64,000 bases of DNA from Mizuhopecten yessoensis (Eukaryota). The position numbers and the translations under genes were made by a program. The first letter of the stretch is position 1. Each line of letters opens with the position of its first letter. Below are positions 1 to 63,354 of the stretch, piece by piece. The DNA lies in assembly GCF_002113885.1 (NCBI RefSeq), contig NW_018404940.1, positions 1,983,286 through 2,047,285 on the forward strand, read 5' to 3'. The notes under the pieces were generated by a model. It was not told the DNA's origin. It did not search any database and saw nothing but the letters and a program-made list of their open reading frames with translations.

Positions 1-722
1 AATGTCACAGGGTGTCAAGATGTTTAAAATCTTTAAACGACTTCCTCTGAATAACCAAGAGATCCAGGGTGAAGATATTTGGCCAGAAGCATGCTGATAT
101 AAAGTGTGACCAAGTTTGTTCAAATGAATGACCTTCACCCTTATTCAAGGTCACACAGGTCAACTGTCTGAAAAAAACCTTTATACGACTTCCTCTGAAC
201 AATCAAAAGGCCTAGGCTAATGATATTCGGCTAGTAGCATGCTCAAATAAGAAACTTTGAAGAGTGCTCTAAAGAATAATCTTCATCCGTATTCCAGGTC
301 ACAGGTGTCAAATATGTTGAAAACTTTAAACAACTTTTTCTAAATAACCAAAAAGCAAGGGTGATGATATTAGGCCAGATATATGCTGGGTTGAAGGGCT
401 ACCAAGTTTGTTCAATGAATGACCTTGGATTATATTCAATATATATATATGTAAAAATAACCCTTTAAATGACATATTCTTGATAATCAAAATGCAAAGA
501 ATGGTGATAAGTGACTACTAGCATCCTCAGATGAAGAGCTCTCAATATTGTTCATGTGAATGACCTTGACAAACTGTCAATGTCACATCTGGTCAATTGT
601 GTATAAATATTTGAATGTCATCTTCTCAATAAACAAAATATATAAGGTACTGATATTTGGTAAGTTGCAAAGTATTTGAGTCCAATACCAGGTGAGCAAT
701 GCAGGCCCATTGGTCCTTTTTT
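1..722 (+). mobile_element. Partial mirror copy of the HINE-like element
   Basis: Ends with CAGGTGAGCaatgcaGGCCCATTGGTCC followed by a T run; reverse complement of 37604-38326. Confidence 0.65.
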
Positions 723-13078: not shown

Positions 13079-13609
13079 ATGCTAAGGGCCAAAAAATAGA
13101 AATCTAAATCGGTCAAAACTACTGTTTAAACAGAAATGAAGAGGCGTAATACCTCCTAAATTTTAAATTTCAAAATAAGAGGAATACTGATTTATTTAAT
13201 ACCATTAACGACTGAAATGTCCATATTCACAACATAACAACAGTGTCACTATTCAAGAGAGATAATTGTTGCCATCAAGTTACGGCAAATTTTGGGACTA
13301 AAATATCCACCTGAAAAGTCACCATCGTGTATCTTAAAAGAAGAAAGTAAAGAATATATGTAACTGCACTTTAAATTCGGCAATAGGTGCAGTATGCCGA
13401 AAGTGAATTAAACTGCATCATACAGATGTTACGTCTTTATATATAAGGCTTACAAACTTATACTGCTACCAAAGCTTTGAGTGCATTGGGAGTCTCATCA
13501 AAGGTTTGTTATAGTATAACTGTCTTCGTGAGGGGAATATTCGTTTTGATTTACATCGCAATAAAACGATTGAAATGTTGATTTCTGTATGTAAGGTTGG
13601 CTTACAATT

Positions 13610-13734
13610 TGGTGGAGATAACAATGCCTTGCCACAGCGAAATCTGGTTTGTTCTGCTTAATGGAGCAGCGATTGTTGTTGATTCTGATATTGAGTTTTG
13701 TGCTAGTTTCACCCACGTCCATTTTTGCCTAGCC
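13610..13734 (-). mobile_element. Penelope-like GIY-YIG endonuclease remnant
   Basis: VGETSTKLNIRINNNRCSIKQNKPDFAVARH matches the YVGET..L..R...H......VA.H pattern; it abuts the 5S TRIM. Confidence 0.55.
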
Positions 13735-13738
13735 ATAC

Positions 13739-14169
13739 TGTAACGTGCGGGCGGTCACCCATCCAACTACATGTATTGACCACGCTCGACGTTGCTGAAC
13801 TAGTGAGCGAGTCCCCGGGTCATATCGCATCGCTGGAAAAGCTAGCTAGCCAGTAAGGTAGTATTTCCCCCTCATATACATTATTAGCGGTTACACTCTT
13901 CCCCCCTCTGGGAAGTCTCGTCCTGGGGAATCCCGTAGGTCCTCCCTATGTATCAATGCACCTTCCTTAACCACCGTGAACTGGCCTTACATGATTACAG
14001 AATCCCAACGCTGCCACCAAAAGTAACGTGTGAACGGTCACCCATCAAACTACTGACCACGCTCGACGTTGCTGAACTAGTGAGCGGATCCCGGGGTCAT
14101 ACCGCATCGCTGGAAAAGCTAGATTGCCAGTAAGGCATTATTTCCCTCCCATATACCTTAACTGTAACA
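13739..14169 (-). mobile_element. Non-autonomous LTR retrotransposon (TRIM) with 5S rRNA-derived LTRs
   Basis: Direct repeats 14022-14169 and 13739-13895, the latter TGTAAC...GTTACA. PBS TGGTGGCAGCGTTGGGATTC (14019-14000), PPT AGAGGGGGGAAGAG (13909-13896), TSD ATAC (13735-13738 and 14170-14173). Each LTR has about 55 nt matching the 5S rRNA internal control region. Confidence 0.85.
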
Positions 14170-14774
14170 ATACTCGGACAAAAAAACATGTAGGTGGCTG
14201 CCATAGATCATCGCCCAAACTGGAATGAATAGAAAAGGCGCCCAAGGGAAAGATACTAGAACACCAACCTAAAACCCTCTACCCTCGAGGTATGAACAAA
14301 CGATAAGCTCTTGTTATCCGTTTGTTTCCCTTCGAGGTAGCTAGGTTATTGACAAGATGGTTCACTTTTATTGGTCTGGTGACTCAAACCTGCTGCCAGA
14401 CAGTGTATGAGACTGATTGACGCTGTCGGATTTAGTGGACGAACTATCTGTCTCTCGATGTGTCATTTCGTCAATTACATTTTATTTATACTTGTGCTAC
14501 AGATTTTACTCATTCTAACTAAATTTTGATAATATAATTTATGCAAAAACATATATTTACTATATATTCATTAATCAGAAAGATATTTCAATAATTGTTA
14601 TTCCATATTGCATTTGTCATCTTGGGACGAATCGTGCCATTTTCCCAGCTTTTGCATCTTCACGCTCCAGTTTTTTTCGGTATTTTTAATCTCTTTGTCG
14701 TTGACGCATATACACAGTTTTATAGCTAGGTCAACGATGTGGTCATTGTACATTCTGCCTGCGGCCTACGGTTG

Positions 14775-62971: not shown

Positions 62972-63354
62972 TATAGCGGAACTGGATTGGGTCGATCGTC
63001 GGCGACCAGATAGCTTATTTGGGGAAGAACGTCTGTCTAGAGTTCGGAGGGTCCCGGGTTCGAACCCCGGCGCTGTGGTGCATTTTTCCTCTCCTGTTAA
63101 AGTGGTGCCTGTGACCAACAATTGTTTCAACCACTTGGTATAATGCTTGGCAAAGGGATACCCTAACCTTGGTTGTAAGTAGTTGTGTCTTTGAGGGTGA
63201 AGACTTAGAAAAAGGAGGGCGGAATGTAGCGGAACTAGACCGGGTCAATGACCAGGTCGCTCAATTGGTAGAGCATCCATCTAGAGTTCGGAGGGTCGGG
63301 GGACTCCCAAATTTGAACCCCGGTCTGGACGTGCATTTTCCCTCTTCTGTTATA
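62972..63354 (+). mobile_element. Non-autonomous LTR retrotransposon (TRIM) with tRNA-derived LTRs
   Basis: 130-bp LTRs at 62972-63101 and 63225-63354 contain A-box (TCGCTCAATTGG) and B-box (GGTTCGAACCC) sequence. PBS TGGTGCCTGTGACC (63103-63116), PPT AGAAAAAGGAGGGCGGAA (63207-63224), TSD CTTT (62968-62971 and 63355-63358). Confidence 0.83.

What the first reader, a model, noticed from the sequence alone, without database searches (positions are those of the whole stretch)
13739..14169. 431-bp LTR retrotransposon whose LTRs carry the 5S rRNA Pol III promoter (Cassandra/Ajax-like TRIM in an apparent mollusc, 4-bp TSD)
Seen: on the minus strand the order is LTR (14169-14022), 2 nt, PBS TGGTGGCAGCGTTGGGATTC, ~90 nt non-coding, PPT AGAGGGGGGAAGAG, LTR (TGTAAC...GTTACA, 13895-13739), flanked by the duplication ATAC. 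The 5' LTR reads TCCGCTCACTAGTTCAGCAACGTCGAGCGTGGTCAGTAGTTTGATGGGTGACCG (the 3' LTR has a variant with a 6-nt insertion). This aligns in sense orientation with the box A/intermediate element/box C region of animal 5S rRNA. Known: the PBS is complementary at 19/20 nt to the conserved tRNA-Leu(AAG) 3' end plus CCA. 5S-bearing TRIMs are established in plants (Cassandra); from memory, the animal example Ajax was described from nemerteans with 5-bp TSDs. Inference: this is a Pol III (TFIIIA-dependent) transcribed parasite mobilised by a Gypsy-type partner. The host and the 4-bp TSD may define an undescribed lineage. The LTRs are only about 85-88% identical by eye, so this copy is old.
Basis: partly seen in the sequence, partly recalled or inferred. 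Interest (0 to 1): 0.9.

Follow-up and report, generated by a model that had tools for sequence, protein, structure and literature searches.

The report
Scallop mini-retrotransposon with 5S promoter
This is an old, decayed copy of a small non-coding LTR retrotransposon whose repeats carry the internal promoter part of a 5S rRNA gene; elements like this were known only from plants and two ribbon worms, and here one turns up in a scallop-type genome.

Summary
Window 13739-14169 (minus strand) is a 431-bp TRIM. It has two LTRs (148 and 157 bp, about 88% identical, TGTAAC...GTTACA ends), a TT spacer and a 20-nt primer site. That site matches the host's tRNA-Leu(AAG/TAG) 3' end plus CCA at 19/20. 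A polypurine tract and a perfect 4-bp duplication (GTAT) complete it.

It belongs to a dispersed family: roughly 480 LTRs and 130 internal regions, estimated from marker counts. In 21 full-length copies only a 4-bp duplication beats chance.

LTR positions 82-139 are colinear, in sense, with 5S rRNA positions 38-97 (box A, intermediate element, box C). A profile of the LTRs hits the host's 5S genes at E = 1e-6. Rfam's full 5S model finds nothing, as expected for a fragment.

The host is a pectinid scallop, very probably Mizuhopecten yessoensis.

The family is old (LTR pairs median 86% identical) and no young copies were seen. Pol III transcription and a Gypsy-type helper are inferred, not shown.

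The closest known element is Ajax (nemerteans, 5-bp duplication). I found no report of a molluscan 5S TRIM. The scan's earlier notes on this genome list only tRNA-type TRIMs.

Verdict: new member of a known kind.

The parts
14170..14173 (-). Target-site duplication, upstream copy (GTAT on the element strand)
   Evidence: The 4-bp length is supported family-wide: 51/84 flank positions match against 28.7 +/- 4.0 in shuffles.
14022..14169 (-). 5' LTR, 148 bp, starts TGTTAC and ends GTTACT (the family has TGTAAC...GTTACA)
   Evidence: Profile of 59 family LTRs.
14150..14155 (-). TATA-like TATATG at LTR positions 15-20. It lies about 25-28 nt upstream of the start site predicted from 5S geometry.
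   Evidence: The column majority (A/T)ATATGA is held by most of 79 LTRs. A role is inferred only.
14114..14117 (-). The only T4 run of the LTR on the sense strand (LTR positions 53-56, context GCTTTTCC). Candidate Pol III terminator when read in the 3' LTR.
   Evidence: Present at this place in 20/25 5' LTRs and 22/25 3' LTRs. 22/25 copies have no other T4 between the two.
14035..14088 (-). 5S rRNA-derived segment of the 5' LTR (LTR 82-135, matching 5S 38-91; box A, intermediate element, box C). Colinear with no indel from 5S position 50 onward.
   Evidence: 31/42, 25/30 and 25/31 identical to three host 5S sequences, z = 6.7-9.8, antisense at background; family profile against host 5S, E = 1.4e-6 and 3e-5.
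14020..14021 (-). TT spacer between LTR and primer-binding site
   Evidence: Conserved as TT in the copies.
14000..14019 (-). Primer-binding site, 19/20 complementary to the host tRNA-Leu(AAG/TAG) 3' end plus CCA
   Evidence: Host tRNA-Leu genes end GGTTCGAATCCCACCGCTGCCA. Most copies carry the perfect 18-mer.
13896..14021 (-). Internal region, 126 bp, non-coding. Carries a 12-nt deletion relative to the other copies.
13914..13923 (-). Remnant (loop and 3' arm) of the family's pre-PPT hairpin GTCTCG-GGA-CGAGAC. The 5' arm is lost in this copy's deletion.
13896..13909 (-). Polypurine tract AGAGGGGGGAAGAG, abutting the 3' LTR
   Evidence: Conserved as GGAGGGGGGAATAG in the copies.
13739..13895 (-). 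3' LTR, 157 bp, TGTAAC...GTTACA
13750..13811 (-). 5S-derived segment of the 3' LTR. A 6-nt insertion between the intermediate element and box C breaks the 5S spacing.
13837..13840 (-). T4 run of the 3' LTR (candidate terminator of a full-length Pol III transcript)
13735..13738 (-). Target-site duplication, downstream copy (GTAT)

Best explanation
[quoted passage not shown] Its LTRs contain the internal-promoter part of a 5S rRNA gene, so it is a 5S-type 'TRIMp3' like Ajax and Cassandra. The host is a pectinid scallop.

Shown here: LTR-PBS-PPT-LTR anatomy, a 4-bp target duplication, a dispersed family of several hundred copies, a sense-oriented 5S-derived segment covering box A, intermediate element and box C with 5S spacing, and a primer site for tRNA-Leu(AAG/TAG).

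Inferred working model, for copies when they were active:
1. TFIIIA/TFIIIC-type factors bind the 5S boxes in the 5' LTR.
2. They place Pol III about 50 nt upstream, near LTR position 43, some 25 nt below a TATA-like motif.
3. The transcript runs through U5 (which holds the promoter), the PBS, the 126-140-nt internal region, the PPT and U3.
4. It ends at the single T4 run at LTR 53-56 of the 3' LTR. That leaves a short R of roughly 10-14 nt.
5. The RNA is packaged, reverse-transcribed from tRNA-Leu and integrated by proteins of a Gypsy-type element that makes 4-bp duplications.

Because the promoter lies inside the transcribed U5, it is copied into both LTRs at every cycle.

My odds: TRIM with a 5S-derived LTR segment, about 0.95. 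That segment was the working Pol III promoter, about 0.55-0.6. Helper of Gypsy type, about 0.7.

This copy is dead. Its LTRs differ by 12%, the PBS has one mismatch, the 5' LTR terminal A is changed, the 3' LTR spacing is broken, and half of the pre-PPT hairpin is deleted.
For: **Anatomy and coordinates:**

**Family:** 581 first-look candidates, with about 30 full-length copies at 76-83% identity among the 40 scored. An LTR 25-mer has 403 hits and an internal 25-mer 93 hits at up to 3 mismatches; the reversed-pattern controls give 0.

**Target duplication:** with k = 4, 51/84 positions match against 28.7 +/- 4.0 in shuffles (0 of 5000 shuffles reach it), and 4 of 21 pairs are perfect. k = 3, 5, 6 and 7 are at chance.

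**5S origin:**
- An nhmmer profile of the LTRs hits host 5S loci at E = 1.4e-6 and 3e-5, in sense, with LTR 86-139 on 5S about 44-97.
- The window's own LTRs score z = 4.4-9.8 against shuffles, with antisense at background.
- LTR 92-133 aligns to 5S 50-91 without a gap, so the box A to box C spacing is kept.

**Primer:** host tRNA-Leu(AAG) and (TAG) genes carry the exact 3' end. The perfect 18-mer PBS occurs 152 times; control 0.

**Terminator-like feature:** there is one T4 per LTR at a fixed place, and none between in 22/25 copies.

**Helper pool:**
- 15 of 21 non-TRIM loci with the same PBS end in GTTACA plus 1-6 nt.
- Six of the ten ORFs tested downstream of that PBS hit gag-type Pfam families: SCAN 4, zf-CCHC 5, Retrotrans_gag 1 above threshold and 1 below. 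The other four showed no gag-type family: three had no hit at all or none above Pfam's curated cut-off, and L060 showed only weak C2H2 zinc-finger matches, all below cut-off.
- tRNA-type TRIMs of the same genome share the TGTAAC...GTTACA ends and the TT spacer, and one (L091) has a perfect 4-bp duplication.

**Precedent:** Ajax and Cassandra (PMC10886601).
Against: - No transcript, start site or polymerase data exist here.
- Rfam's 5S model does not recognise the LTR. Upstream of 5S position 38 the LTR is not recognisably 5S.
- Between diverged subfamilies the 5S-like stretch is only slightly better kept than the rest of the LTR: 0.55 against 0.47 cross-group identity. Selection on the boxes is therefore not demonstrated.
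- The T4 run sits only about 10 nt downstream of the predicted start. Pol III would have to read through it in the 5' LTR yet stop at it in the 3' LTR, and R would be very short. A TATA-like motif at the right distance would equally fit Pol II.
- No autonomous element with shared internal sequence was found in 40 loci.
- No copy pair above 84% identity was seen, so activity cannot be tested on a living copy.
Confidence: 0.8

Rival explanations
1. An ordinary Pol II-type TRIM in which the 5S-like stretch is a passenger. A 5S pseudogene or a 5S-headed SINE fragment once landed in an LTR and was copied into both LTRs. It never served as the promoter. Transcription came from the TATA-like motif or from read-through of host genes.
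For: - A TATA-like motif lies 25-28 nt upstream of the same predicted start.
- The whole LTR, not only the 5S part, is kept across subfamilies: 0.47 against 0.55.
- Rfam's 5S model is silent.
- The T4 lying right after the predicted start is awkward for Pol III.
Against: - The retained piece is exactly the type-1 internal control region, with unbroken 5S spacing and in sense orientation.
- The same piece sits at the same place in the LTR of nemertean Ajax: box C lies 13-16 nt from the LTR 3' end (read by eye from PMC10886601 DataS1).
- No AATAAA-type signal is evident in the LTR.
- The element length, about 430 bp, fits Pol III products.
- In plants, Cassandra is reported to be transcribed from its 5S promoter (as stated in PMC10886601).
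Confidence: 0.17
2. Not a retrotransposon: a local tandem duplication or satellite unit that happens to include a 5S pseudogene, or two neighbouring 5S-derived SINEs.
For: - Some loci show tandem LTR-internal-LTR-internal arrays (L008/L011, L023, L083).
- A 35-nt satellite made of LTR-end plus PBS units exists at L077.
Against: - Copies are dispersed on many contigs, each with its own flanks and a 4-bp duplication.
- TG...CA termini, and an 18-nt tRNA-Leu primer site exactly 2 nt after the LTR.
- A polypurine tract abuts the 3' LTR.
- No LINE-like tail or poly(A).
Confidence: 0.02

Closest known systems
Ajax (Ajax-1_NGe, Ajax-1_LiLo; Kojima 2024, PMC10886601), a 5S-type TRIM of two lineid nemerteans
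   Same: - Animal TRIM of the same size: 421/434 bp against 431.
- LTR 154/163 against 148-157 bp. Internal region 113/108 against 126-140 bp.
- The LTR holds only the promoter part of 5S (box A, IE, box C), in sense, close to the LTR 3' end.
- A TATATGG motif lies about 70-75 nt upstream of box A.
- The primer site is assigned to tRNA-Leu.
- Hairpin with a CG-(N)GGA-CG apex just before the PPT.
- The 5S-like stretches are about 79-81% identical (34/43 and 35/43), counted by eye from the supplement.
   Different: - Host phylum: Mollusca against Nemertea.
- 4-bp against 5-bp duplication (Table S2).
- 18-20 nt of tRNA-Leu complementarity against 6 nt (Fig. S3).
- LTR ends TGTAAC...GTTACA against TGYAT...AATACA.
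- By eye, no similarity outside the 5S part, hairpin and PPT.
- Ajax LTRs have no T4 run.
- Common descent or independent capture cannot be decided, because 5S itself is so conserved.
Cassandra (Kalendar et al. 2008), a 5S-type TRIM of land plants
   Same: A non-autonomous LTR element with 5S-derived LTR sequence that supplies a Pol III internal promoter. It forms tandem LTR-internal arrays in some loci (PMC7215508 for Cassandra; here).
   Different: - Plant host; 565-860 bp.
- From memory: a near-complete 5S that folds like 5S, a tRNA-iMet primer site and a 5-bp duplication.
- Here only 5S positions 38-97 are present, with no match to the 5S model, plus tRNA-Leu and 4 bp.
Helenus (tRNA-type TRIMp3), notably Helenus-1/3_MiYe and Helenus-2_PeMa of scallops
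   Same: - Same genome, same size class, 4-bp duplication.
- Same LTR ends TGTAAC...GTTACA, with a TT spacer before the PBS.
- Same kind of pre-PPT hairpin and PPT.
- Probably served by related helpers.
   Different: - The promoter module is tRNA-like, not 5S-like.
- Different primer tRNA.
- No LTR similarity (z = 0.3).
- Helenus-3_MiYe copies are nearly identical and therefore young, whereas the 5S family is old.
SINE3 (5S-headed SINEs, Kapitonov and Jurka 2003)
   Same: Uses a 5S-derived internal promoter to drive a short non-coding retroelement. Kojima proposes a SINE3 as the source of such LTR inserts.
   Different: SINE3 has no LTRs, PBS or PPT and is moved by LINEs. This element has all three and a fixed 4-bp duplication. 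I found no report of a bivalve SINE3.
biv-TRIM (Satovic et al. 2019, PMC6934838)
   Same: A TRIM of bivalves.
   Different: biv-TRIM has no canonical primer site, carries a conserved TGATCCCAAAGGAC block, and no 5S relation is reported for it. The present element has a canonical PBS and lacks that block (read directly).

Membership tests
TRIM (terminal-repeat retrotransposon in miniature) | Two direct terminal repeats of about 100-250 bp with TG...CA ends, total length under 1 kb | tested here: met
   148- and 157-bp LTRs, TGT(T/A)AC...GTTAC(T/A), 431 bp in all.
TRIM (terminal-repeat retrotransposon in miniature) | PBS complementary to a tRNA 3' end next to the 5' LTR, and a PPT next to the 3' LTR | tested here: met
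   19/20 to host tRNA-Leu(AAG/TAG)+CCA, 2 nt after the LTR. The PPT abuts the 3' LTR.
TRIM (terminal-repeat retrotransposon in miniature) | No coding capacity | tested here: met
   The longest overlapping ORF is 61 aa, on the opposite strand.
TRIM (terminal-repeat retrotransposon in miniature) | Dispersed copies with target-site duplications of fixed length | tested here: met
   Hundreds of copies. 4-bp duplication, 0 of 5000 shuffles reach the observed count.
TRIMp3 (TRIM with a Pol III promoter taken from a small-RNA gene; Kojima 2024) | [quoted passage not shown] | tested here: met
   5S positions 38-97 in sense, spacing kept.
TRIMp3 (TRIM with a Pol III promoter taken from a small-RNA gene; Kojima 2024) | That sequence actually drives Pol III transcription of the element | not testable with these tools
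   No expression or ChIP data. Only indirect signs are available: one conserved T4 per LTR and the element's length.
Ajax | TRIM whose LTR holds a partial 5S sequence covering box A, IE and box C (Kojima's descriptive definition) | tested here: met
   Definition read.
Ajax | 5-bp target-site duplication | tested here: not met
   4 bp here. Ajax has 5 bp (Table S2).
Ajax | Sequence homology to Ajax-1 outside the 5S part (same lineage) | tested here: inconclusive
   Compared by eye only, because the published consensus has no reference usable in the tools. Only the pre-PPT hairpin apex, the PPT and a TATATGG motif are alike.
Cassandra | The LTR carries a near-complete 5S that fits the 5S structure | tested here: not met
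   No RF00001 hit at E <= 10 on this copy or on 18 others.
Cassandra | Land-plant host | tested here: not met
   The host carries scallop Helenus families. A Helenus-3_MiYe 30-mer has 18 exact hits, and a Helenus-2_PeMa-like element lies in the window.
SINE3 | 5S-derived head at the 5' end, LINE-type tail, no LTR/PBS/PPT | tested here: not met
   LTRs, PBS and PPT are present. The 5S part lies at the 3' end of each LTR.
Helenus | tRNA-like sequence inside the LTR | tested here: not met
   No tRNA-model hit in 13500-14400 at E <= 10.
biv-TRIM | No canonical PBS; conserved TGATCCCAAAGGAC block in the internal region | tested here: not met
   A canonical PBS is present and the block is absent from the element sequence.

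The most novel reading that the evidence does not exclude
The scallop family and nemertean Ajax may be two surviving branches of one ancient lophotrochozoan 5S-TRIM lineage, not independent captures. All animal TRIMp3 families (5S-type and tRNA-type) may depend on one clade of Gypsy-type helpers. Those helpers would recognise a conserved hairpin with a CG-(N)GG(A/G)-CG apex placed just upstream of the PPT. Nine different, perfectly complementary stems are seen across scallop, oyster and nemertean families.
Probability: 0.2. Interest if true: 0.7.

Novelty: new member of a known kind. Interest (0 to 1): 0.52.

Why it matters
TRIMs that borrow a 5S rRNA promoter were known from land plants (Cassandra) and, since 2024, from two related ribbon worms (Ajax). 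A third case in a mollusc has a different integration footprint and a full tRNA-Leu primer site. It suggests that the 'LTR element with a Pol III promoter' design arises, or persists, more widely in animals than reported.

It gives a second animal system in which to ask how a Pol III transcript can serve as an LTR-retrotransposon genome. The open points are where R lies, how a terminator in the 5' LTR is passed, and which helper packages the RNA.

Practically, these LTRs are a source of 5S-like hits: the RF00001 first look gave 20,333 candidates in this genome. That can confuse rDNA and small-RNA annotation in bivalves.

The hairpin shared with Helenus and Ajax offers a concrete candidate for the cis signal that ties such parasites to their helpers.

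Tried and rejected
- **Rfam.** cmscan found no 5S_rRNA hit on the window at gathering threshold, on 13500-14400 at E <= 10, or on 18 other copies. The only 5S hits were true 5S-like loci. I take this as the expected failure of a full-length structural model on a 60-nt fragment, not as evidence against 5S origin, because sequence tests are significant.\n- **Selection on the promoter boxes.** Per-column majority frequency within the main family is flat at 0.81-0.88. Identity between main and diverged subfamilies is only a little higher in the 5S part, 0.55 against 0.47. This is not decisive.\n- **Structure of the internal region.** RNAalifold on 34 internal regions gave only a weak 5-pair helix at -1.5 kcal/mol and missed the hairpin. 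Counting my hairpin on the same alignment gave 170/204 paired cells against 166.4 in shuffles. Within the family there is almost no informative covariation. I counted pairs in a script rather than with the count of structure pairs, to avoid typing a long dot string.\n- **Helper search.** I fetched 40 of the 152 exact PBS sites. No autonomous element with TRIM-like internal sequence was among them. L087, which looked like LTR-internal-LTR, is a 2.2-kb tandem duplication at 99.9%.\n- **Variant primer site.** GTAGTGAC matches no tRNA gene; its 14 genomic hits include the TRIM copies I can place, with no tRNA-gene cluster among them.\n- **Young subfamily.** The copy with the most similar LTRs (L026, 96%) has no relative above 82%.\n- **Spread beyond this genome.** A degenerate 22-mer of the box C region has no exact match in the metagenome contigs. 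No animal genome collection is on hand.\n- **Backbone shared with Helenus-3_MiYe.** Only the hairpin/PPT block aligns (24/31, z = 2.7); the LTRs do not (z = 0.3).\n- **Comparison with Ajax in a tool.** Left out, because the published consensus has no reference here. The tools' own outputs showed majority lines for the LTR and the internal region; they are not reproduced here.
Full report
**1. What is at the coordinates**

Read on the minus strand, the window shows the following, in order:
- GTAT at 14173-14170;
- a 148-bp LTR (14169-14022), starting TGTTAC and ending GTTACT;
- a TT spacer;
- TGGTGGCAGCGTTGGGATTC (14019-14000);
- about 90 nt without coding potential;
- AGAGGGGGGAAGAG (13909-13896);
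- a 157-bp LTR (13895-13739), running TGTAAC...GTTACA;
- GTAT again at 13738-13735.

The repeat finder and a MAFFT alignment confirm the two LTRs. Identity is 87.7% over aligned bases. The 3' LTR has a 6-nt insertion. No ORF longer than 61 aa overlaps the element.

**2. It is one copy of a dispersed family**

A DNA search of the window's own genome (987.6 Mb, 82,659 contigs) gave 581 first-look candidates. Of the 40 that were scored, about 30 are full-length at 76-83% identity, on many contigs.

Two family-specific 25-mers were counted at up to 3 mismatches. The LTR marker gave 403 hits and the internal marker gave 93; the reversed-pattern controls gave 0. From the ratio of exact to near matches I estimate about 480 LTRs and about 130 internal regions in the main family. 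That means roughly 130 full-length or internal-bearing copies and about 200 solo LTRs or fragments. These figures are rough.

Some loci are tandem LTR-internal-LTR-internal arrays (L008/L011, L023, L083), as described for Cassandra.

I placed LTR ends with a profile HMM in 21 independent full-length copies. The 4 bases on either side match at 51 of 84 positions, against 28.7 +/- 4.0 when partners are shuffled (0 of 5000 shuffles reach this). Four pairs are perfect. Lengths 3, 5, 6 and 7 are at chance. The duplication is therefore 4 bp.

**3. Age**

Within elements the two LTRs are 69-96% identical, with a median of 86% and a K2P distance of 0.15. Full-length copies are at most 83% identical to either query element. 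The copy with the most similar LTRs (L026, 96%) has no relative above 82%.

The family looks like an old burst, with no living subfamily in what I could sample. The neutral rate in scallops is unknown to me. 'Tens of millions of years' is an order-of-magnitude guess only.

**4. The 5S-derived segment**

Rfam's 5S model finds nothing on this copy or on 18 others, even at E <= 10. Sequence-level tests are clear, however.
- A profile built from 59 family LTRs hits two 5S loci of the same genome at E = 1.4e-6 and 3e-5, in a search space of 147 kb. The match is in sense, with LTR 86-139 on 5S about 44-97.
- The window's 5' LTR aligns to three host 5S sequences with 31/42, 25/30 and 25/31 identities, at z = 6.7-9.8 against 1000 shuffles. 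The antisense scores sit at the shuffle mean.
- LTR 92-133 aligns to 5S 50-91 without any gap. The distances between the equivalents of box A (5S 50-64), the intermediate element (67-72) and box C (80-97) are those of a real 5S gene. These box coordinates are the Xenopus ones, from established knowledge.
- Upstream of 5S position 38 I see no convincing similarity.

The LTR therefore carries the internal control region only, as Kojima describes for Ajax. In the window's 3' LTR the 6-nt insertion falls between the intermediate element and box C and breaks that spacing.

**5. Primer**

ARAGORN calls the six loci I fetched tRNA-Leu(AAG) or tRNA-Leu(TAG).

With CCA added, the window's primer site matches at 19/20. 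Most copies carry the perfect 18-mer, which occurs 152 times in the genome. A subfamily has a variant (GTAGTGAC) that matches no tRNA gene and keeps only 11 complementary bases.

**6. Host**

- A 30-mer taken from Kojima's Helenus-3_MiYe consensus (Mizuhopecten yessoensis) has 18 exact matches and 34 near matches here (control 0). The four copies I fetched are full-length elements that contain this 30-mer exactly.
- The assembly size and contig count also fit my memory of ASM211388v2.

I conclude that the host is a pectinid scallop, very probably M. yessoensis.

**7. Helpers**

About half of the 40 exact-PBS loci I could fetch are not this TRIM. Of 21 such sites, 15 end their LTR in GTTACA, 1-6 nt before the same 18-nt primer site.

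Ten ORFs downstream of that primer site were scanned against Pfam. Six of them hit gag-type families: SCAN 4, zf-CCHC 5, Retrotrans_gag 1 above threshold and 1 below. The other four showed no gag-type family: three had no hit at all or none above Pfam's curated cut-off, and L060 showed only weak C2H2 zinc-finger matches, all below cut-off. This pattern is typical of Ty3/Gypsy-type gag proteins.

So the genome holds a pool of gag-bearing LTR elements with the same primer and the same LTR terminus. None shares internal sequence with the TRIM, and I single out none. Their RT and integrase lie outside the fetched DNA, so 'Gypsy-type' rests on gag domains and on Kojima's argument for 4-bp animal Helenus.

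Scallop Helenus-3_MiYe copies share the TGTAAC...GTTACA ends and the TT spacer, and one (L091) has a perfect 4-bp duplication. They are nearly identical to one another. So an element family with the same termini has been active recently, even though the 5S family is not.

**8. Working model (inferred)**

By 5S geometry the start site should lie about 50 nt upstream of the box A equivalent, near LTR position 43. A TATA-like (A/T)ATATG sits at LTR 15-20. From memory, several invertebrate and fungal 5S genes need such an upstream element.

The sense strand has exactly one T4 run per LTR, at LTR 53-56 in the context GCTTTTCC. It is present there in 20/25 5' LTRs and 22/25 3' LTRs. In 22/25 copies there is no other T4 between the two.

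This suggests the layout U3 = 1-42, R = about 43-56, and U5 = 57-148. U5 holds the promoter, which would be transcribed and so restored in both LTRs.

Weak points:
- R would be very short.
- Pol III would have to pass the T4 only about 10 nt after starting.
- With T at about 24%, one 270-nt stretch free of T4 is not unusual.
- Pol II initiation from the TATA-like motif would give the same start.

I put Pol III use at about 0.55-0.6.

**9. A shared hairpin before the PPT**

Most copies have GTCTCG-GGA-CGAGAC 8-10 nt before the PPT. In three well-kept copies the minimum-energy fold contains it as an 8-bp stem (z = -1.0 to -2.6). The window copy has lost the 5' arm through a 12-nt deletion.

In 345 kb of fetched DNA, perfect 4-bp stems around a CG-N3-4-CG apex occur mainly at this position in these LTR elements, including another LTR element, L060; seven of the 16 sites are elsewhere (L013, L027, L045).

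By eye, the published consensus sequences show the same device with different stems:
- Ajax-1_NGe: GACT/AGTC.
- Ajax-1_LiLo: GGAT/ATCC.
- Helenus-1 and -3_MiYe: AACT/AGTT.
- Several scallop and oyster Helenus families: GTCTT/AAGAC, GTGTT/AACAC, GATCTT/AAGATC, AAATT/AATTT.

That makes nine stems, all complementary, around an apex CG-(N)GG(A/G)-CG. Kojima's text does not mention it, and a literature search found no description. I regard it as a candidate cis signal shared with the helper clade. It needs a formal test.

**10. Comparison and novelty**

The element works like Ajax and Cassandra. By Kojima's descriptive definition (a TRIM with a partial 5S sequence in its LTRs) it would be called Ajax-like. 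It differs in host phylum, duplication length (4 against 5 bp), strength of the primer site and LTR termini. Homology outside the 5S part is unresolved.

It is not Cassandra (plant host, near-complete 5S). It is not SINE3 (no LTRs). It is not Helenus (tRNA-like LTR). It is not biv-TRIM (no canonical PBS).

Full-text searches found animal 5S TRIMs reported only from nemerteans. Kojima's 5S screen started from one nemertean genome and was not a survey of molluscs. Repbase and Dfam could not be consulted.

The scan's earlier notes on this genome list tRNA-type TRIMs only; '5s', 'rrna' and 'leu' were met in no note.

I therefore file it as a new member of a known kind.

**11. Limits**

- No expression data.
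- No other animal genomes.
- The comparison with published consensus sequences was by eye.
- I built no full-length consensus of the TRIM, and I neither repaired nor ranked any gag-bearing element.

Noticed in passing
L009:1744-1758, L013:1767-1781, L086:1602-1616, L060 around 660-674 (minus); window 13914-13923 (remnant): Pre-PPT hairpin with a CG-(N)GG(A/G)-CG apex. By eye, Ajax and many Helenus consensus sequences from scallops, oysters and nemerteans have the same device with nine different complementary stems. Kojima 2024 does not mention it.
   Followed up: partly
window 62972-63354: A 383-bp tRNA-type TRIM (Helenus-like). Its LTR closely resembles Helenus-2_PeMa of Pecten maximus. It has its own pre-PPT hairpin, GTCTTTG-AGG-GTGAAGAC, with wobble pairs.
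   Followed up: partly
L077 (G000:C1925:903647-906944), about 1400-1890 on the minus strand: A minisatellite of about 13 units of 35 nt. Each unit is an LTR-end-like ACGT(T/A/G)ACAC, then the 18-nt tRNA-Leu primer site, then ATTACAAA. It looks like an array built from an LTR/PBS junction.
   Followed up: no
L031 (G000:C66098:23-141, minus) versus L032:1501-1596, L033:1501-1596, L034:1501-1616: The only full-scoring 5S gene found (110.8 bits, on a 629-bp contig) is of a different sequence type from the mollusc-type 5S pieces elsewhere. L032 and L033 are 96-nt 5S pseudogenes with an internal deletion, inside a segment of more than 2.3 kb duplicated at 92%. L034 is a 5'-decayed pseudogene. The genome may have two 5S types, the true array may be unassembled, or the small contig may be foreign.
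   Followed up: partly
L060 (G000:C796:9734-12751), minus strand: A different small LTR element: tRNA-Leu PBS, an internal region of about 0.85 kb with a 240-aa ORF giving weak C2H2 zinc-finger hits, the hairpin CATG-CGGGACG-CATG, a PPT, and an LTR starting TGTGATG.
   Followed up: no
L089-L092 (G000:C11, C680, C2466, C2985): Helenus-3_MiYe copies that contain a 30-mer of the published consensus exactly and have nearly identical LTRs, so they were active recently. L091 has a perfect 4-bp duplication (ATAA). In L089 the two flanks are reverse complements of each other.
   Followed up: partly
L054, L056, L059, L064, L065, L075, L078, L085, L086, L088: Diverged subfamilies of the same 5S TRIM (68-73% identical to the window copy). 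Their box C equivalent reads GGCTGGATGGGTGCC instead of AGTTGGATGGGTGACC. All keep the perfect tRNA-Leu PBS. The two L088 copies lie 8.4 kb apart and are nearly identical, possibly a segmental duplication.
   Followed up: partly
L008/L011 (G000:C76668:83988-84699), L023, L083: Tandem LTR-internal-LTR-internal arrays of the 5S TRIM, as reported for Cassandra in plants.
   Followed up: no
L004, L005, L009, L010, L012, L021 and others: A subfamily whose primer site reads TGGTGGCAGCGTAGTGAC. This 3' end matches no tRNA gene in the genome; 14 hits, which include the TRIM copies I can place.
   Followed up: yes
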